IMG/VR virus record: IMGVR_UViG_3300036944_001289
Location: 145,283 to 209,282 of that record
Strand: one strand, 5' to 3'
DNA length: 64,000 nt
This document shows, piece after piece, positions 3,949 through 64,000 of the stretch; position 1 is the stretch's first letter; each line of letters opens with the position of its first letter. Under the pieces are notes generated by a model. It did no database searches. It had not been told where the DNA came from and worked only from the letters and a program-made list of their open reading frames with translations. A program made the translations under genes and the position numbers.

Positions 3949-4328
3949 TGCCGCAAGTAACTATAGCATCATTAAAAAACCTGCTTAGGTCTAACGTTTG
4001 TGAGATAGAATTCTTACGGCGTAGACCTAAAGCGGGTCGCCCTTTGTATAGGAAAATGATGTGTACGTTATGTAATGATCTTTTAAACTCAACAAATGGT
4101 AGAATATCCTTAAACTACAGACCACCAGTTTATGGTTTACCATATAATGCAGAGTCAAAAAATCTATTACCGGTTTGGGACATCTTTATGCAAGATTGGA
4201 GAATGGTAAATATGGATGCTTGTAATCTTCTCAATACAATAAAAGCAGATGATTCATTCTGGAAACATTATAACGAAAATCTATATACTATGTCAGCGCA
4301 AGATAAAATCAATTATATGGACCTATGA
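3948..4328 (+). CDS. Conserved T4-like phage protein (SH3/Sm-like, DUF2693-like)
   Basis: VCEIEF..., RKMMCTL, VWD...WR pattern. Confidence 0.5.
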   Translation: MPQVTIASLKNLLRSNVCEIEFLRRRPKAGRPLYRKMMCTLCNDLLNSTNGRISLNYRPPVYGLPYNAESKNLLPVWDIFMQDWRMVNMDACNLLNTIKADDSFWKHYNENLYTMSAQDKINYMDL

Positions 4329-4676: not shown

Positions 4677-6308
4677 GTGTTAAAAAATCTAGTCTCTTTC
4701 TTTCCCGAAAATTATACACCCAGTAATCAGCAGCAAGCGCTCCTAGAAAAAATAGATAAAGCGTTTGAAGAAAATAAGTTTGTAATATGTAATGCACCTA
4801 CGGGTTCTGGTAAGAGTTTTTTATCTAAAACATTAGGTAATTACTCTACAGAATGTTCTTCCGAATTTAAACAGCTTATTACAAGTTATGATGCGTTTAA
4901 ACAGACATACGATGGTTCGTATGAATATGAACCTGACTGTATGGCAGAAGAACCTTTCGGTTCTTTTGTATTAACAATAACAAAATCTCTTCAAGATCAG
5001 TATCAAAAACTATTTCAAGAAGATGCTATTTTAAAAGGTAAAACCAATTATACATGTCAAGTAGATGATCAATTTGATGTAGACACCGCACCATGCTTAT
5101 TGACACCTAAATTAAAAGAGACATGTTGGCAAAAAAACATGTGCCCTTATTATAATGCGAGAAATGATATACTGACAAGTAGGTTCGGTATCTTAAATTA
5201 TAAGATGTTTCTTTCGTTGCCAGGTCATGTAAAAAGGAAGCAATTTATCATCTGTGATGAAGCTTCTGAATTGGAAGATACATTGGTTAGTCAATTTTCA
5301 GCTACGATTGACCCTGAAAAGCTTAGAATAGCAGGAGCTAAAGTAACACCTCTTATCAATCATACAGACTATAGTCAAGTTCAAAAATGGCTTAATAATA
5401 TATGCATTACGGTAAGTGAGGAAGCTGATCTATTACTTTCTAAACTCCTTTCAAAGAAGAACGATAAAAATGCTCAATCGGATAAAATTAAACTTAATTA
5501 TTTAAGAAGTATACACGGTAGTATTAAAATGATTTTAGACACATGGCACGAATGTGAATATGTAGTACAGAAAGAGGATAAGGTCGTTAAATTAACACCT
5601 CTAAAGGTAGATACTTTATCTAAACATATATTTGAACATGCTGATAAAGTGTTATTAATGTCTGCTACTATAATTGACCATAAGACGTTTGCTAAAACTC
5701 TAGGTATAACTGATTACAAGTATGTAGAGGTTGATAGTACTTTTGATCCTGCTAAAGCTCCAATCTTTATTAATACCAAGCTAAAGCTTAATCATGGCAA
5801 TCTAAAAGATAATCTACCTACGATTGCTAAACAAATACAAGCTATTTGCGATAAACATAAAAACGATAAAGGTATTATACATACACATTCGATGGCAATT
5901 ACTAGTTACTTGCAAGGTTCAATAAAAGGTAAGAGATTCCTTTTTAGATCTGAAGGTCAGAAGAATGAAGTGCTATTAACACAACATGCAGAATCTACAG
6001 AACCTACTGTTGTTGTAAGCCCATCAGTTGCATTTGGTGTTGACTTTAAAGATGATTTAGCTAGATTCCAGATAATAGTAAAAGCAGCATTTCCACCTTT
6101 AGGTGATGCAAGAATAAAGAAGTTATTTGAAATGGATAAACAATGGTACACTGATAAAATGCTTTGTAATTTTGTACAAGCATGTGGTAGAGGTGTTAGA
6201 AGTAAGGATGATCATTGTATAACGTATGTGTTAGATGCGTGTATATATGATGCTATTATTAAAAATAACCGTAATCTACCTAAGTACTTTCTCAATAGAT
6301 TCGTATAA
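4677..6308 (+). CDS. DinG/Rad3-like SF2 helicase
   Basis: APTGSGKS Walker A, Fe-S Cys cluster, DEAS, MSAT, QACGRGVR. Confidence 0.9.
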   Translation: MLKNLVSFFPENYTPSNQQQALLEKIDKAFEENKFVICNAPTGSGKSFLSKTLGNYSTECSSEFKQLITSYDAFKQTYDGSYEYEPDCMAEEPFGSFVLTITKSLQDQYQKLFQEDAILKGKTNYTCQVDDQFDVDTAPCLLTPKLKETCWQKNMCPYYNARNDILTSRFGILNYKMFLSLPGHVKRKQFIICDEASELEDTLVSQFSATIDPEKLRIAGAKVTPLINHTDYSQVQKWLNNICITVSEEADLLLSKLLSKKNDKNAQSDKIKLNYLRSIHGSIKMILDTWHECEYVVQKEDKVVKLTPLKVDTLSKHIFEHADKVLLMSATIIDHKTFAKTLGITDYKYVEVDSTFDPAKAPIFINTKLKLNHGNLKDNLPTIAKQIQAICDKHKNDKGIIHTHSMAITSYLQGSIKGKRFLFRSEGQKNEVLLTQHAESTEPTVVVSPSVAFGVDFKDDLARFQIIVKAAFPPLGDARIKKLFEMDKQWYTDKMLCNFVQACGRGVRSKDDHCITYVLDACIYDAIIKNNRNLPKYFLNRFV

Positions 6309-7132: not shown

Positions 7133-7495
7133 ATGACTAAAACTAAAACTTTAACCTGCGTAGTTACAGGAAGTACTACTGTTTACTCAGGTGAATTCCT
7201 TGCAAAGAAAATTGAAGAGTATGGTTCTGAAGAAAACTTAGAAAAACGATATATTTGTAAAGAAGTAAAAAGCTTTCTTAAAAAGAGATATAAGATTAAA
7301 GATATTAGAAAAGTATTATCTGTGGATGATAAGATACCACTACCTGATAATGAAACTCTGGTCTTTTTAGAAATGAATTTTAATAGCAGTATTAATACTG
7401 AGAACTCAGCATCTACAACAATAACAGAATTTACATACAATAAGTCAGATAAAGATGTTGAAGAATTTATCAACAAGTATATAATTCAAAAATGA
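7133..7495 (+). CDS. Hypothetical protein (paralogue of 60046..60354)
   Basis: Shared TC..(S/T)G...GS.E.L.K.Y N-terminus. Confidence 0.6.
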   Translation: MTKTKTLTCVVTGSTTVYSGEFLAKKIEEYGSEENLEKRYICKEVKSFLKKRYKIKDIRKVLSVDDKIPLPDNETLVFLEMNFNSSINTENSASTTITEFTYNKSDKDVEEFINKYIIQK

Positions 7496-8013
7496 TACCT
7501 ATATCTTTAGTAGATACACCTGTTAATGTGGAGGAATTTAAAATTTTAACACCAGCAGAAACTAAGTACGCGCTCTTTTTAGGATTTATTATTCGTAATG
7601 AATATGATAACAAAAGGCTAAAAATAGCTGAAAATTTTAAGCCGGTAAAGTTTTTACATGTAAAAAGAAAAGATAATCAAATAACAGAGTGTATACCATT
7701 GTATGGTGTATTATTAACACCTAATAGTGCTATTGTAAACTTAATGAAGACAGTGCGATCACAAGAAAAAGTAAAAGAAATGCCGCTTATAACATACAGA
7801 AACATACTTTCTCAGTATAATTTTTCATGTGATAATACATATTCATTATACAGCGATATGATATACCCAATTGATTTCACAAATTTAAAATCAGTTTGCG
7901 ATGATACATTTAACGAAGATAAAAAAGTATTTCAACACCTACTATCATTAGATGAAAAACATTTTGATTTCCAATCTTTTGCATCATTGAAATTATTAAT
8001 TCTTAACATATAA
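7492..8013 (+). CDS. Hypothetical protein
   Basis: ATGA-coupled ORF. Confidence 0.6.
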   Translation: MIPISLVDTPVNVEEFKILTPAETKYALFLGFIIRNEYDNKRLKIAENFKPVKFLHVKRKDNQITECIPLYGVLLTPNSAIVNLMKTVRSQEKVKEMPLITYRNILSQYNFSCDNTYSLYSDMIYPIDFTNLKSVCDDTFNEDKKVFQHLLSLDEKHFDFQSFASLKLLILNI

Positions 8014-8038
8014 TAGCAGATAAATAATAATCTAATTT

Positions 8039-9010
8039 ATGTTATTCGAAGAGCAAATATCACGCAAACCTAACTTGTACCCTTGGACAAAGGAATTTAT
8101 CAAAGCAATGCATAACGGTTTTTGGACAGAAGATGAATTCTCATTTAAATCTGATGTACAGCAATTTAAAGTAAATTTAACTAAACAAGAACAAGATATG
8201 ATAATCAAAGTTCTATCCGCTATAGGGCAAATAGAGGTAGAAGTAAAAACATTCTGGGGAGAGCTTGGTAAGAATCTACCACACCCATCGATTAAAGATC
8301 TTGGGTTTGTTATGGCTAACACCGAAGTTATTCATAATAACGCTTATGAAAAACTTTTAACACTTTTGGGACTAGAAGATATTTTCCAAGAAAATCTCAA
8401 GCTAGACTGGATTCAAGGTAGAGTTAAGTACCTAAAAAAGCACAATCATAGATTTTACAAAGACTCTAAAAAACAATACTTATACGCTATAATTCTATTC
8501 ACATTATATGTTGAAAACGTTTCATTATTTTCTCAGTTTTATATAGTCAACTGGTTTGCAAGATTTAAAAATCTCTTAAAAGATACTGATCAACAAGTCA
8601 AATATACACGTAACGAAGAAAATATACACGCACTAGTAGGTATTAAAATAATTAACACATTGAGAGAAGAATACCCGGAACTTTTTGATAATGAACTCGA
8701 AGAAAGAATACTAAGTGAAGCACGCGAATCTATTAAGGCTGAATCAATCATAATCGATTGGATGGTAGGTGATCTACGTGAAGAAAATGTATCACCAGAT
8801 ATTCTTAAAGAGTTTATTAAAAACAGAATGAATCAATCATTATTAAACATAGGTTTTAAGAGTATATTTGATATAGATCAAGATCTACTAAGCAAAACAA
8901 CCTGGTTTGATGAAGAGTTACTTGGTAATAATATGACCGACTTTTTTCATACTCGACCTGTCGAATACAGCAAAAAAGGGCATTCATTCTCTGAATCTGA
9001 TTTATTTTAA
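8039..9010 (+). CDS. nrdB: Ribonucleotide reductase class I beta subunit
   Basis: EVIH..AY radical Tyr; ENVSLFSQF; NEENIH; DFF...Y tail. Confidence 0.95.
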   Translation: MLFEEQISRKPNLYPWTKEFIKAMHNGFWTEDEFSFKSDVQQFKVNLTKQEQDMIIKVLSAIGQIEVEVKTFWGELGKNLPHPSIKDLGFVMANTEVIHNNAYEKLLTLLGLEDIFQENLKLDWIQGRVKYLKKHNHRFYKDSKKQYLYAIILFTLYVENVSLFSQFYIVNWFARFKNLLKDTDQQVKYTRNEENIHALVGIKIINTLREEYPELFDNELEERILSEARESIKAESIIIDWMVGDLREENVSPDILKEFIKNRMNQSLLNIGFKSIFDIDQDLLSKTTWFDEELLGNNMTDFFHTRPVEYSKKGHSFSESDLF

Positions 9011-37904: not shown

Positions 37905-38059
37905 AAGATTATTTATAAGAAAACCTCTCTTTATATTTTTACGCCGCCCAAAAATTCCCGAAAGGCGTAATACTATCTATATTACCGAAAGTTCCGGGCC
38001 CTATATAGCGTTTCTATTTTTCTGCGCGCGTCGCGAGAATTTCCGAGGGTTCCGAGCTT

Positions 38060-38154
38060 TTTATGGTTCCGAGCGCTCTCTGCGGCGAATATAGAATTTC
38101 CCGCGACTTTTGCGGCGAGAATAGCGCTATTTATGGTTCCGAGCGCTCTCTGCG
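38060..38154. repeat. 25-bp direct repeat x2 in GC-rich non-coding patch
   Basis: TTTATGGTTCCGAGCGCTCTCTGCG at 38060 and 38130. Confidence 0.85.
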
Positions 38155-38555
38155 CAGAGAATTGGGCATGGGGCTCATTATACGAAAGTTCCTTTAACTA
38201 ATAAGTGAAAACTCCTTTGCCCTGGTCTCTGAAACCTTTTTATATGAAAACCTTTTTTGAACTAGAGGTTCCGACTTTTCCGAAAAAAGTTATCTGCGAT
38301 ATAACCACTATCTTTTCTGAAAAGGTTCCTTTTATGCAGCCAAAGGAACATCTATATAATTAATGTAACTATTTATTATGAAGCGACAACCATTAGCTTA
38401 TCCGAAATGTATAATATGAAATATTCTTTTAGGAGTTATATATCAAAGCTTTTCTGAAATGTATAATATGAAGATAGTATATAGCAGTTTCTGAAAAGTA
38501 TAATATGAAGACCAATTAAGGCTACAAATAATATGCAGCCCTAATAAGTGCTAAC

Positions 38556-50425: not shown

Positions 50426-50501
50426 TGGTGCCTTCGTTGGGATTCGAACCCAAATAAACGCTTTAGAAGAGCGTTGTCCTAATCCATTGAACGACAAAGG
50501 C
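50426..50501 (-). tRNA. tRNA-Arg(UCU)
   Basis: Full cloverleaf; ACGCT-CTTCTAA-AGCGT; TTCGAAT; encoded CCA. Confidence 0.92.
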
Positions 50502-54305: not shown

Positions 54306-54502
54306 GTTTTATTTTATATCAGTTCCTGCGGATTAACCAATCTCTTTACCTCTAAAGTAAGCACATAAAGCCATCCAAAAAGCTGTTAAAAACGTACAGA
54401 TTGCATAACCTGCACCCATATTCTTGTATATAAGTGCAGATACTGATCCAAGTATAATACAAGGTACTGTACCATCTAAAGCGATGTATCGTAGTATTCT
54501 TT

Positions 54503-54709
54503 TCATTTTGTTTTATATTCTGAGTTACTAGGCAAGCTCTTAGTTAACTGCTTAAGGTGTATAAGTAGCTGAGTAAGCTCATTAACCTCATCGTGCGGCC
54601 ATTCTTCATTATTATTTTCTTCTAATAAATTGATAATCTCTTCCATCTTGGAAGAAGCTTCAGCACGTGTATAAGAGATATCTATCTCTTGATTTGTTTG
54701 AGTGTCCAT
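54503..54709 (-). CDS. Hypothetical protein
   Basis: ORF in array. Confidence 0.5.
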   Translation of the reverse strand: MDTQTNQEIDISYTRAEASSKMEEIINLLEENNNEEWPHDEVNELTQLLIHLKQLTKSLPSNSEYKTK

Positions 54710-54735
54710 AAAAGTATTGGGAAAAGGAAATCGGA

Positions 54736-54822
54736 GGCTAACCAGTCGTTGCAGAAAATGCGGTTAAATGTCACAGGTCATGCGGAGCAGCTAGCCCCGC
54801 ATTTCTGAACTTGTCGTTAGGC
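54736..54822 (+). mobile_element. Integron attC site (87 bp)
   Basis: R'' GGCTAAC, 5-nt spacer, L'' GTT(G)CAGA, stem AAATGCGG/CCGCATTT, L' TCTGAAC, 5-nt spacer, R' GTTAGGC. Confidence 0.8.
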
Positions 54823-55016
54823 ACGGGGAACCGTCCTGCGTGTAGTCGGCAAAGGTGCATTCCGTTGAAGTTCCCGCACGCAGACGCTTTGCACGGTCTG
54901 CTTATCCATGCGCCGCCCCTTCGCTCCATAGGATAGTATCCTTCACAGAGCCTAACAAGGCACTGGACGCGAAGCCCTTTGCGGGTCGCGGGTTGATCGG
55001 AAGCGTTGTTTTTCAT
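54771..55016 (-). CDS. Cys/His-rich small ORF spanning the cassette, antisense to attC
   Basis: C..C..C..C..H; GC-rich relative to genome. Confidence 0.45.
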   Translation of the reverse strand: MKNNASDQPATRKGLRVQCLVRLCEGYYPMERRGGAWISRPCKASACGNFNGMHLCRLHAGRFPVPNDKFRNAGLAAPHDL

Positions 55017-55117
55017 CGGTAGTCAGGTAGAGCGCGGCTTTTTTCTGACGCATTGAGCGCCTGAGCGACCTTGGCTTGGGATTCGGGACTTAGTTTGGGA
55101 TTCATAAATTATTCATT

Positions 55118-55717
55118 TTAGAATGATTCAATAACCATCTTCATCCCGGCCTTAATATCTTTAAGATCTTTTACGAGCTGCTTACGGTTATAAGAGTTAT
55201 ACTTAATTGTAAAGTCTGCCAAGAACTCTGCAATGGGTCGATCTTTAAGCGATGCACTAACAATCTTTTGCCAATATTCACTTTGTTTGCATAACTCTAC
55301 AATCGAAGCTTCTGTCTTTACAGTACCATCACTATCTATAAAACACTCAATACGTTGACCTATATCGTAATACATACTATCAACGTAGTAACCTCGCATA
55401 CGATATGATAAATCACAATCTTTACTTACTAGTGTTGATAGATTATAGCCTGTACGTTTTGCAGGTGACTTATGATACCATTTATGGTATTTTTCATCGA
55501 ATTCATTTAAACTTCCATTCTTTACGAAACCAAACTCACTTGTCAAAGACACTGCAGTATCTAGCATGCACCAGAATTGCCAATGATTGTATGGTTGAGC
55601 ATTTTCCCATGCACCATCACTAAGTTGACCTTTGATTTCATTATCAAAGATAGCCTTGAGTCCTTTATTGGGTAACAAAAATAGGTGTTGTTTCATATCG
55701 AAAATATTGTAGTACAT
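55118..55717 (-). CDS. Hypothetical phage protein
   Basis: E..GQLSDG.WEN..P..HW motif; true start probably MKQHL. Confidence 0.6.
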   Translation of the reverse strand: MYYNIFDMKQHLFLLPNKGLKAIFDNEIKGQLSDGAWENAQPYNHWQFWCMLDTAVSLTSEFGFVKNGSLNEFDEKYHKWYHKSPAKRTGYNLSTLVSKDCDLSYRMRGYYVDSMYYDIGQRIECFIDSDGTVKTEASIVELCKQSEYWQKIVSASLKDRPIAEFLADFTIKYNSYNRKQLVKDLKDIKAGMKMVIESF

Positions 55718-56541: not shown

Positions 56542-57162
56542 ATGTCTCATTTTTATATTTTATATAAGATAGTAAATAAAGTCAATAATAAATTCTATAT
56601 AGGTGTACATAAGACTGTCGATATACACGATAACTATATGGGTTCTGGTCATCTTATAAAGGCTGCTATTGCAAAATATGGTATCGAGAATTTTACAAAA
56701 GAAATAATAAACGTATTTACAAATAGTGTAGATGCGTATAATAAAGAAAGAGAAATTATAACAAAGGAGTTATTAGAGAGCAAGCAGTGTTATAATATAA
56801 AGGAAGGTGGTCGTGGTGGGTTTGAACATATAAGACAGAAAAATCTACATAAGTGGTCTAAAGGTAAGGTAATTATACATAACCCTTTAACTGGGCAGCA
56901 AACTAAAGTATCGACTGATTTATTACAATCTTATTTGGACAAAGGATGGTTAAAGGGATTTAAGCCTGAAGCACTAAAACGGATGTCGGAGTCTGGTAAA
57001 ATTAAAATACAAACAGCAGAACATCGCAGTAAGAACTCTCAAACCAAAAAGGGTTGCAAAAAATTAATACCACCAGAACATAGTATGTATAAACAGAGAT
57101 ATAAATTTATTAAAATTGAGAAGGTAGAAGAATATATAGCTGCAGGTTGGAGACTGTTTTAG
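56542..57162 (+). CDS. GIY-YIG homing endonuclease (Seg-like)
   Basis: LYKI.N.VN.KFYIGVH; YMGSG; KYG.ENF.KE; YN...GG. Confidence 0.88.
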   Translation: MSHFYILYKIVNKVNNKFYIGVHKTVDIHDNYMGSGHLIKAAIAKYGIENFTKEIINVFTNSVDAYNKEREIITKELLESKQCYNIKEGGRGGFEHIRQKNLHKWSKGKVIIHNPLTGQQTKVSTDLLQSYLDKGWLKGFKPEALKRMSESGKIKIQTAEHRSKNSQTKKGCKKLIPPEHSMYKQRYKFIKIEKVEEYIAAGWRLF

Positions 57163-63636: not shown

Positions 63637-64000
63637 TTAAGCTTTTTTCCATTCTACAACAGTTGTTTTAACATATCTCTGACCGTTCATTTTAACCTCT
63701 GTAATTTCTTCGGGTAGATTTGATAATTCAGGAGGGAGTTCATCTTTATTTTTACCGGAGACCTTGGCATTATCACAGACAAAGGCATTACCACAGACCA
63801 AGGCATTACCACAGACCACGGCATTACCATAGACCTCGGCATTACCACAGACCTTGGCATTACCATAGACCATGGCATTACCACAGACCCCGGCATAACC
63901 AGAGACCCAGGCTTTACCATAGACCTCGGCATTACCACAGACCTTGGCATTACCATAGACCATGGCATTACCAGAGACCCTGGCATTATCACAGACCAAG
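63637..64000 (-). CDS. Hexapeptide-repeat (left-handed beta-helix) protein, 5' truncated
   Basis: V.GNA. repeats encoded by 18-bp tandem units. Confidence 0.8.
   Translation of the reverse strand, partial: LVCDNARVSGNAMVYGNAKVCGNAEVYGKAWVSGYAGVCGNAMVYGNAKVCGNAEVYGNAVVCGNALVCGNAFVCDNAKVSGKNKDELPPELSNLPEEITEVKMNGQRYVKTTVVEWKKA

What the first reader, a model, noticed from the sequence alone, without database searches (positions are those of the whole stretch)
54720..55105. Integron attC site and mini-cassette captured in a lytic-type phage
A GC-rich island in an AT-rich genome. 54736-54822 has full attC anatomy: RYYYAAC, 5-nt spacers, extrahelical G in L'', a second unpaired A, and GTTAGGC. 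The next unit runs GTTAGGC (54816) to GCCTAAC (54950), perfect complements as expected for one cassette, and continues into a second, apparently truncated attC. The only ORF (81 aa, Cys/His-rich) reads antisense through both sites, co-oriented with the phage genes. No integrase is in the window. Inference: the phage exchanges DNA with host integron arrays, and attC arms are co-opted as coding sequence.
Basis: partly seen in the sequence, partly recalled or inferred. Interest (0 to 1): 0.66.

Follow-up and report, generated by a model that had tools for sequence, protein, structure and literature searches.

The report
Integron-type attC hairpin in a phage
A 385-base GC-rich scrap of foreign DNA between two genes of an AT-rich T4-like phage carries one intact hairpin with the full anatomy of an integron attC recombination site; near-identical copies sit in unrelated GC-rich phage-like contigs, so it adds a case to the phage-borne attC sites first reported in 2023.

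Summary
Window 54720-55105 is a GC-rich (0.52-0.65) island that fills the gap between two genes of a complete 209-kb, 33% GC T4-like phage with no integrase. Positions 54736-54822 (+) have the full attC anatomy. A strict attC grammar hits only this site in the whole phage genome, against about 0.01-0.03 hits expected per window.

The site is a real, conserved element. Copies 80-97% identical lie in GC-rich phage-like metagenome contigs, and their flanks are unrelated. A covariance model built only from these copies finds genuine class 1 attCs (dfrA17, dfrA1, cmlA). It also finds clusters of further attC-like sites in two of the contigs.

- The second "truncated attC" (54950-55011) is only weakly supported.
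- The 81-aa ORF has no relatives and is probably spurious, so the claim that arms are co-opted as coding sequence fails.
- The nearest copies are in phage-like contigs, not in host integron arrays.

In every context the genes run opposite to the attC top strand. The insertion junctions I could map show microhomology rather than G|TT crossovers. attC sites in virulent phages were published in 2023, so this is a new member of a known kind, with an unexplained orientation twist.

The parts
54720..55105 (.). GC-rich foreign island that fills the gap between the 199-aa gene and the 68-aa gene
   Evidence: GC 0.42-0.65 against 0.33. No gene is called here by JGI or Logan gene callers. Absent from four related phage records, two of them complete. 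About half depth in a second sample.
54736..54822 (+). Intact attC-type hairpin element, 87 nt. R'' 54736-42; spacer 54743-47; L'' arm 54748-63 with bulged G 54751 and one extra A; centre 54764-96; L' arm 54797-810; spacer 54811-15; R' 54816-22.
   Evidence: Sequence. Only hit of the strict grammar in the genome. Top hit of real-attC model R1 in the window, 14.3 bits, E 0.27. Copies 80-97% identical in L087, L088, L090, L091, L116 and L117. Family model R2 finds real attCs.
54817..54949 (+). Putative gene-less mini-cassette body, from TTAGGC to just before GCCTAAC
   Evidence: It starts with TTAGGC, which with a preceding G is the exact complement of GCCTAAC at 54950. No homologue found at DNA level.
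54950..55011 (+). Weak, degenerate second attC-like site (GCCTAAC-AAGGC ... GGAAGC-GTTGTTT)
   Evidence: R1 second-best hit in the window, 11.9 bits, E 1.1, L-box pairs all broken. Not found by R2.
54771..55016 (-). 81-aa Cys/His-rich ORF, probably not a gene
   Evidence: No relatives. No Pfam or PHROG family. Not called as a gene. Its last residues are only the translation of the attC arm, as in unrelated ORFs of L087 and L088.
54952..55105 (-). Two overlapping short frames (30 aa from ATG 55105; 33 aa) that may be the frameshifted remnant of a small GC-rich gene
   Evidence: Six-frame reading. The ribbon-helix-helix look of the KKAALYLTTDEKQRF stretch is my impression only; there is no family match.
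54503..54709 (-). AT-rich 68-aa phage gene whose ATG lies 26 nt from the element
   Evidence: In the other copies too, an ATG on this strand lies about 5-11 nt from the element, except L091, where the next called gene starts 48 nt away.
55118..55717 (-). 199-aa phage gene bordering the island
   Evidence: No relatives in the related phage records. Its 3' part (55101-55380) shares the half depth of the island in run X2.

Best explanation
The island is a short piece of GC-rich foreign DNA lodged between two genes of an AT-rich, integrase-less T4-like phage.

Its left 87 nt (54736-54822, + strand) is an intact member of a conserved family of about 88-nt hairpins. These have the architecture of integron attC recombination sites: inverted core boxes, 5-nt unpaired spacers, an L box with a bulged base, a second bulge six pairs further on, and a variable centre. 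The rest is decayed non-coding DNA, comprising a possible gene-less mini-cassette with a degenerate second site and frameshifted ORF remnants.

Shown:
- the anatomy and its rarity by chance;
- the family;
- its recognition of real attCs;
- its absence from relatives;
- the lack of any integrase in the phage.

Inferred:
- The piece came by recombination from a GC-rich phage, prophage or cassette array of the kind seen in L088, L090 and L091, which carry clusters of such sites.
- As single-stranded DNA the site would fold and could be cut and joined at G|TT by an integron integrase supplied by a host. Five of six attCs from virulent phages behaved this way in published assays.
- In this phage it is most likely a passenger, a solitary attC lacking an integrase (SALIN-like).
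For: - Anatomy identical in its boxes to real attC_dfrA17: GGCTAAC, 5 nt, GTT[G]CAG ... CTGAAC, 5 nt, GTTAGGC.
- The strict grammar hits only this site in 209 kb, and only attC_aadA1 in R100; about 0.01-0.03 hits are expected per window.
- Four copies in metagenome contigs have arms conserved, centre variable, similarity ending at the two boxes, and unrelated flanks.
- Variation in the right box falls after GTT.
- Model R2, built from the family alone, finds attC_dfrA17 (31.1 bits), attC_dfrA1 (28.4 bits) and attC_cmlA5 (23 bits) with the correct strand and ends. The best false hit in the same search is 12.6 bits. With filters off, background in the window reaches 14.6 bits.
- L090 and L091 hold 4 and 5 such sites on one strand, with compensatory changes in the L box and stem.
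- The island is absent from relatives.
- attC sites in virulent phages are recombined by IntI1 (PMC9892861). The SALIN concept comes from bioRxiv 10.1101/2022.09.11.507474.
Against: - My surrogate model of 15 real attCs gives only 14.3 bits (E 0.27). R100 has a false hit at 15.6 bits with the same model.
- No integrase is found in the phage, and none is annotated on any contig that holds a copy.
- Exact words of the element are absent from 185,579 species genomes.
- In every context the supported genes lie on the strand opposite to the attC top strand.
- The L-box bulge is G or A on the top strand. It is C in most real attCs, though G occurs in dfrA17, cmlA and VIM-1.
- The 974-bp insertion that carries the element in L087 has the element in its middle and microhomology at its ends.
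- In the L091 lineage the element keeps the same neighbours.
Confidence: 0.6

Rival explanations
1. The element is a phage intergenic module that only resembles attC. It would act either as an RNA hairpin on the gene strand (terminator, attenuator or processing site between genes) or as a portable patch of homology that lets phages shuffle neighbouring genes by ordinary recombination. The promoter-stem-loop cassettes of T4-type phages would be the model; I recall those from Arbiol et al. 2010 and did not check them here.
For: - All copies are in phage-like contigs, between co-oriented genes. Except in L091, an ATG follows within about 5-26 nt, after a T-rich run on the gene strand.
- 30 nt of one arm are identical in all copies, which is more than the structure needs.
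- The 3' arm can pair with either of two upstream segments, and L090 has a perfect 12-bp alternative hairpin.
- The centre closes all three frames on the gene strand (sequence).
- Genes run opposite to the canonical cassette orientation.
- Mapped junctions show microhomology.
- The element is absent from bacterial species genomes.
Against: - No Rfam family matches on either strand, even at E 10.
- No promoter or terminator consensus lies in the element.
- There is no covariation among the close copies on the gene strand.
- The strand asymmetry (bulge positions, spacers) matches attC top strands. The family model finds real attCs on their top strands only. Its own reverse strand scores 11.3 bits against 111.6.
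- A plain terminator would not need AAC/GTT boxes, 5-nt bubbles and bulges at fixed places.
Confidence: 0.3
2. The island is a small protein-coding moron. The 81-aa Cys/His-rich ORF would be a real gene and the hairpin its incidental 3' end.
For: The ORF is open, co-oriented with the phage genes and starts with ATG.
Against: - No homologue in the word search or in the exhaustive search: one marginal 37-residue hit at E 1.5e-4.
- No family match.
- Not called by two gene callers.
- Its C-terminal PNDKFRNAG stretch is simply the open frame of the attC arm, and unrelated ORFs in L087 and L088 share it.
Confidence: 0.05
3. The hairpin is a chance inverted repeat in a scrap of GC-rich DNA.
For: - The fold energy is not unusual (z -0.56).
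- The R1 score is within the false-positive range.
Against: - Conserved copies exist in at least six other contigs.
- Grammar hits in random sequence number 0-2 per 5 Mb.
- The family model detects real attCs.
Confidence: 0.03

Closest known systems
attC sites and attC clusters without an integrase (CALINs) in virulent and temperate phages (Qi et al. 2023, PMC9892861)
   Same: attC-type sites in integrase-less phage genomes. These include a myovirus of unknown host with several ORFs between sites, and DNA methyltransferase genes next to sites. Here an N6_N4 methyltransferase gene abuts the element in L116 and L117.
   Different: - One intact site plus a doubtful second in this phage.
- Not run through IntegronFinder or HattCI, and not tested with IntI.
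- The same site family recurs at 80-97% identity in unrelated phage-like contigs.
- Genes here run opposite to the attC top strand. I did not check gene-versus-attC orientation in the published phage cases.
SALIN, a single attC site lacking an integron integrase, and cassette insertion at genomic attG sites (Loot et al., bioRxiv 10.1101/2022.09.11.507474)
   Same: An isolated attC with no integrase or attI nearby.
   Different: - SALINs were described in bacterial genomes as a coding sequence plus attC inserted by IntI.
- Here the DNA on the cassette side of the site is native AT-rich phage DNA, and the foreign DNA lies on the other side.
- No G|TT junction is evident.
Class 1 integron attC_dfrA17, and also the attCs of dfrA12, cmlA1 and VIM-1
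   Same: For dfrA17: identical R'' (GGCTAAC), L'' core GTT[G]CAG with the bulged G on the top strand, L' core CTGAAC, 5-nt spacers ending in C, and R' GTTAGGC. The family model scores attC_dfrA17 at 31.1 bits.
   Different: In real cassettes the ORF is upstream on the same strand, with its stop codon in R''. Here there is no such ORF, and the neighbouring genes are antisense. The centre of the element is unrelated to that of attC_dfrA17.
Promoter-stem-loop mobile regulatory cassettes of T4-type phages (from memory: Arbiol et al. 2010; not checked here)
   Same: A conserved intergenic motif with unrelated genes on either side in the plastic regions of phage genomes, proposed to drive modular shuffling.
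   Different: Those motifs are repeated many times within one phage and carry an early promoter. This element is single-copy in the T4-like phage, has no promoter consensus and has attC-specific asymmetry.

Membership tests
integron attC recombination site | Inverted core boxes R'' (RYYYAAC) and R' (GTTRRRY) | tested here: met
   GGCTAAC and GTTAGGC, 6 of 7 positions complementary. Position 2 departs from the consensus, exactly as in real attC_dfrA17 and attC_dfrA12.
integron attC recombination site | Unpaired central spacers of about 5-6 nt between the R and L boxes | tested here: met
   CAGTC and TTGTC stay unpaired in the predicted DNA fold. Real sites fetched here have 5 nt on one side and 5-6 nt on the other.
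integron attC recombination site | L box with an extrahelical base on the R''-side arm of the top strand, and a second extrahelical base about 6 pairs further on | tested here: met
   GTT[G]CAGAAA[A]TGCGG has the same geometry as attC_aadA1, GTT[C]AAGCCG[A]CGCC. The bulged base is G, not the commoner C; G also occurs in dfrA17, cmlA1 and VIM-1.
integron attC recombination site | Length 57-141 nt with a variable centre; structure kept while sequence varies between sites | tested here: met
   The element is 87 nt. The centre varies among copies. Other sites in L090 and L091 keep the geometry through compensatory changes: GTT/AAC to CAT/ATG, and CAGAAA/TTTCTG to CAGCCA/TGGCTG.
integron attC recombination site | Detected by a covariance model of known attCs (the IntegronFinder model was not available) | tested here: inconclusive
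   Surrogate R1 (15 class 1 attCs) makes it the top hit in the window, but at 14.3 bits, E 0.27. The held-out real attC_dfrA17 scores 19.8 bits and a false hit in R100 scores 15.6. The reverse test is positive: family model R2 finds the attCs of dfrA17, dfrA1 and cmlA5 at 23-31 bits.
integron attC recombination site | Sits at the 3' end of a cassette whose ORF is on the top strand, in an array beside intI and attI | tested here: not met
   No ORF ends in R'' on the + strand. All supported neighbouring genes are on the other strand. No tyrosine recombinase is found in the phage. Clusters of sites do exist in L090 and L091.
integron attC recombination site | Exchange at G|TT of R' | tested here: inconclusive
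   Family similarity stops at the R' box, and the box varies after GTT (AGGC, CGGC, CAGC). The one mapped insertion (L087 against L110 and L111) has microhomology junctions far from the element.
integron attC recombination site | Strand-specific recombination by an integron integrase | not testable with these tools
   Needs an attC x attI conjugation assay, as in PMC9892861.
known structured RNA families (Rfam 15) | Match to a curated covariance model | tested here: not met
   Nothing in 54500-55300 lies within the island on either strand, even at E 10.

The most novel reading that the evidence does not exclude
attC-type hairpins may form a phage-borne cassette system of their own. In the accessory-gene regions of GC-rich phages they occur in same-strand clusters, oriented opposite to the genes, and one family has moved between unrelated phages, including this T4-like one. 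On this reading phages would be a reservoir and vehicle for integron-type cassettes. Alternatively they would use the hairpins for gene shuffling, either through a host integrase acting on the gene-sense strand or without any integrase.
Probability: 0.2. Interest if true: 0.75.

Novelty: new member of a known kind. Interest (0 to 1): 0.45.

Why it matters
Integron cassettes are a main currency of bacterial gene exchange, and phages were linked to them only recently. This case adds three things:
- an uncultured, integrase-less T4-like phage from shale-gas wells that carries an intact attC-type site;
- one attC family shared at up to 97% identity by unrelated phage-like genomes from different samples;
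- small same-strand clusters of such sites in phage-like contigs.

If host integrases act on these sites, virulent phages could ferry cassettes between lineages. If they do not, the family is a clean example of a non-integron use of the attC fold. The consistent antisense orientation of the genes is unexplained and is a concrete thing to test.

Tried and rejected
- **DNA searches of the island.** blastn in near and distant modes against phages and plasmids found no match.
- **Empty-site comparison in relatives.** The flanking 199-aa gene has no relatives in IMG/VR (the viral-contig collection) or in the related phage records. Relatives found through the capsid protein (70-82% identity) lack both the island and its flanks, so no clean empty site exists.
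- **Run X2.** Its contig 'record 3' shares only the 31-nt arm. Its letters were not found in IMG/VR or in JGI metagenome contigs. Its ATG-proximal flank reads like the start of a GC-rich gene, so I take it for a seventh context in the same habitat rather than the phage's other allele.
- **Half depth in X2.** Depth over 54755-55380 is about half that of the flanks, and contigs break at 54732, 55081, 55101 and 55367. An identical 98-kb JGI contig ends at 55080. The locus looks polymorphic, but no joint was reported, so I make no empty-allele claim.
- **Bacterial genomes.** A two-arm gapped pattern and a 20-mer gave 0 hits in genome contigs. These are exact-word searches, so diverged copies would be missed.
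- **Cassette made of 54331-54822.** I rejected the idea that this stretch (two antisense ORFs plus the attC) is one cassette. The module boundary seen in runs X3 and X4 at about 54328-54331 is a gene border, not a G|TT site.
- **Ribbon-helix-helix remnant.** This reading of the minus strand has no family support.
- **RNA fold on the gene strand.** No covariation was found.

Full report
**Where the window lies.** The window is the last 64 kb of a complete virus record of 209,282 bases with direct terminal repeats and 33.3% GC. Portal, major head protein, ribonucleotide reductase and RNA ligase genes mark it as a T4-like myovirus. Its head protein is about 34% identical to those of cyanomyophages. 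Uncultured relatives at 70-82% identity exist in IMG/VR, the viral-contig collection. No integron integrase and no tyrosine recombinase of any kind is found in the whole genome. Public runs that hold the locus are shale-gas metagenomes.

**The observation.**
- From about 54720 to 55105, GC rises to 0.52-0.65 against 0.20-0.38 on both sides.
- The island fills the 408-nt gap between the stop of a 199-aa gene (55118) and the start of a 68-aa gene (54709), both on the minus strand.
- The other GC-rich spots I looked into are coding genes or a cluster of six tRNA genes.
- Two gene callers place no gene in the island.
- The sequence at 54736-54822 reads GGCTAAC, CAGTC, GTT[G]CAGAAA[A]TGCGG, a 33-nt centre, CCGCATTTCTGAAC, TTGTC, GTTAGGC. 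The predicted single-strand DNA fold pairs the two boxes, leaves the 5-nt spacers open and bulges the G, although its energy is ordinary.

**Comparison with real attC sites.** I fetched class 1 integron arrays from plasmids and read the sites downstream of their cassette genes.
- attC_aadA1 shows the canonical geometry on the sense strand: GTT[C]AAGCCG[A]CGCC.
- attC_dfrA17 has the same boxes as the window element: GGCTAAC, 5 nt, GTT[G]CAGC ... GCTGAAC, 5 nt, GTTAGGC.
- Many real sites break the strict RYYYAAC rule (GCATAAC, GGTTAAC, GGCTAAC).
- The bulged base on the top strand is G in dfrA17, cmlA1 and VIM-1.

**Is it more than chance?** I wrote a strict grammar. It asks for N4AAC and GTTN4 boxes at least 6 of 7 complementary, 5-6-nt spacers, 3 pairs, one bulge on the 5' arm, then at least 8 further pairs allowing one more small bulge or mismatch.
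- The element is the only hit on either strand of the 209-kb genome.
- The true attC_aadA1 is the only hit in 50 kb of plasmid R100.
- Markov-random sequence gives 0-2 hits per 5 Mb, or about 0.01-0.03 per window.
- Only 3 of my 16 real attCs pass this strictest form, so the element is, if anything, unusually canonical.
- The grammar was written after seeing the site, which weakens the number but not the order of magnitude.

**A conserved family.**
- A 19-mer from the left arm found four true copies in metagenome contigs: L087, L088, L090 and L091, which have GC 0.51-0.60.
- Thirty nucleotides of the left arm are identical in all five copies. The right arm is nearly so, and the centre varies.
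- Similarity begins and ends at the two boxes, and the flanks are unrelated at DNA and protein level.
- The right box varies after GTT (AGGC, CGGC, CAGC).
- A contig in the second shale-gas run shares only the 31-nt left arm, with other GC-rich DNA on both sides.
- Further copies turned up in relatives of L091 (L116, L117), and a diverged one in L118.
- The element is single-copy in this phage and absent from four related phage records.
- Exact words from it are absent from 185,579 species genomes and from the papers held.

**Model tests.** The IntegronFinder model was not available, so I built surrogates.
- R1 was built from 15 real class 1 attCs with dfrA17 held out. With filters off, its best hit in the window is 54736-54822 (+) at 14.3 bits, E 0.27. 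Its second best is 54950-55011 (+) at 11.9 bits, E 1.1.
- The held-out real site scores only 19.8 bits, and R100 gives a false hit at 15.6 bits. R1 is therefore too weak for long attCs and its result is inconclusive.
- The reverse test is clearer. R2 was built only from the five element copies. In about 225 kb it finds attC_dfrA17 (31.1 bits, E 1e-6), attC_dfrA1 (28.4 bits), attC_cmlA5 (23 bits), attC_VIM-1 (17.1 bits) and attC_cmlA1 (15.4 bits), each on its top strand with the correct ends. The best false hit in that search is 12.6 bits. With filters off, background in the window reaches 14.6 bits, so the last two real sites are near background.
- R2 scores the element's own reverse strand at 11.3 bits against 111.6. 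The strand asymmetry is real and agrees with attC top strands.

**Clusters elsewhere.** R1 and R2 also find further sites on the same strand of the metagenome contigs.
- L090 has four sites in 1,382 bases: 52-165, 380-473, 708-820 and 1073-1179.
- L091 has five: 4156-4249, 6025-6085, 7392-7504, 7960-8031 and 8752-8847.
- These sites keep the geometry while the sequence changes on both sides of pairs. That is the signature of attC sites in arrays.
- The genes around them have phage-family matches: Holliday junction resolvase, DNA methyltransferase, RNA-ligase-like, scaffold-like and protease-like proteins.

**What does not fit the integron picture.**
- In every context the supported genes lie on the strand opposite to the attC top strand. 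The bulges are therefore on the arm far from the upstream stop codon, the reverse of canonical cassettes.
- L087 carries a 974-base insertion (110-1083) relative to L110 and L111, which are 97% identical to it. The element lies in the middle of that insertion. The ends show about 8 nt of microhomology, not G|TT. The insert looks like a moron, a self-contained accessory-gene module, and ends in an intrinsic terminator.
- In the L091 lineage the element keeps the same neighbours, a methyltransferase gene and a 68-aa gene.
- No contig holding a copy shows an annotated integrase.
- These facts keep open a rival reading in which the hairpin is a phage intergenic module that works as RNA or as a patch of homology for shuffling. 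Against that rival: Rfam gives nothing, no promoter or terminator consensus lies in the element, and the asymmetry is attC-like.

**The rest of the island.**
- TTAGGC at 54817 and GCCTAAC at 54950 are exact complements once the preceding G is added, as expected for one small cassette. I estimate by hand that this has roughly a 2% chance of arising by itself.
- The second site has R boxes and spacers but no L box.
- The 81-aa ORF has no relatives: no hit in the word search, and one marginal 37-residue hit at E 1.5e-4 in an exhaustive search. It matches no family. Its tail, PNDKFRNAG, is simply the one open frame of the arm and recurs in unrelated ORFs of L087 and L088. I take it for a chance ORF in GC-rich DNA.
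- Short minus-strand frames from ATG 55105 may be a frameshifted gene remnant. This is an impression only.

**Population data.** In the second shale-gas run the flanks have depth about 10-11.5, but 54755-55380 has only about 4.6-4.7, and contigs break at the island. An identical 98-kb JGI contig ends at 55080. The locus is probably polymorphic, but the other allele was not recovered.

**Comparison with what is known.** Qi et al. 2023 (PMC9892861) screened 10,705 phage genomes and reported 17 attC clusters lacking an integrase, in temperate, virulent and uncharacterised phages. Five of six attCs from virulent phages were recombined by IntI1. Loot et al. defined solitary attCs (SALINs) and insertion outside att sites. 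The kind is therefore known.

What is new here is a further host-unknown T4-like phage, an attC family shared between unrelated phage-like genomes, and the antisense orientation of the genes.

**Verdict.** The best explanation is a solitary attC-type site on a scrap of foreign DNA (confidence 0.6). The main rival is a phage intergenic module that mimics attC (0.3).

Noticed in passing
window 37905-38547: A 640-nt intergenic region with many GGTTCCG-type repeats. It has a 25-nt repeat, TTTATGGTTCCGAGCGCTCTCTGCG, at 38061 and 38131, and three copies of a promoter-like repeat (TTCTGAAA..TATAATATGAA) at about 38400-38510. No Rfam match. It could be an origin or a control region.
   Followed up: partly
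window 56542-57162 (+): A free-standing GIY-YIG homing endonuclease gene (phrog_314, E 9e-39) on the strand opposite to its neighbours, 1.4 kb from the island.
   Followed up: no
L090 1-1382 and L091 4156-8847: Same-strand clusters of 4 and 5 attC-like hairpins in GC-rich phage-like contigs, with the genes on the opposite strand. In L090, site 708-820 spans the stop of one ORF and the start of the next.
   Followed up: partly
L087 110-1083 against L110 and L111: A 974-bp moron-like insertion with small ORFs, the attC-like element and a terminator. It lies immediately upstream of the protease-like gene, after a 418-aa gene in L111, and is bounded by about 8 nt of microhomology.
   Followed up: yes
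L116 3919-6450 against L091 3765-4124: An 843-aa N6_N4 DNA methyltransferase gene next to the element is cut down to 119 aa in L091 by a 2.5-kb deletion at a 7-nt overlap.
   Followed up: partly
genome 1-400 and 209076-209275 (window 63794-63993): The genome ends are GC-rich and encode short tandem peptide repeats of the VYGNAKVSGNA type.
   Followed up: no
genome 37500-38490 (L119 695-1690): A cluster of six tRNA genes outside the window. Three more lie in the window at 50426, 52547 and 53504.
   Followed up: yes
window 54331-54616: A freshwater run holds this stretch (the 57-aa ORF and part of the 68-aa ORF) at 97% identity with other DNA to its left. A relative in another run diverges right of 54327. 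This marks a mosaic boundary at a gene border.
   Followed up: partly
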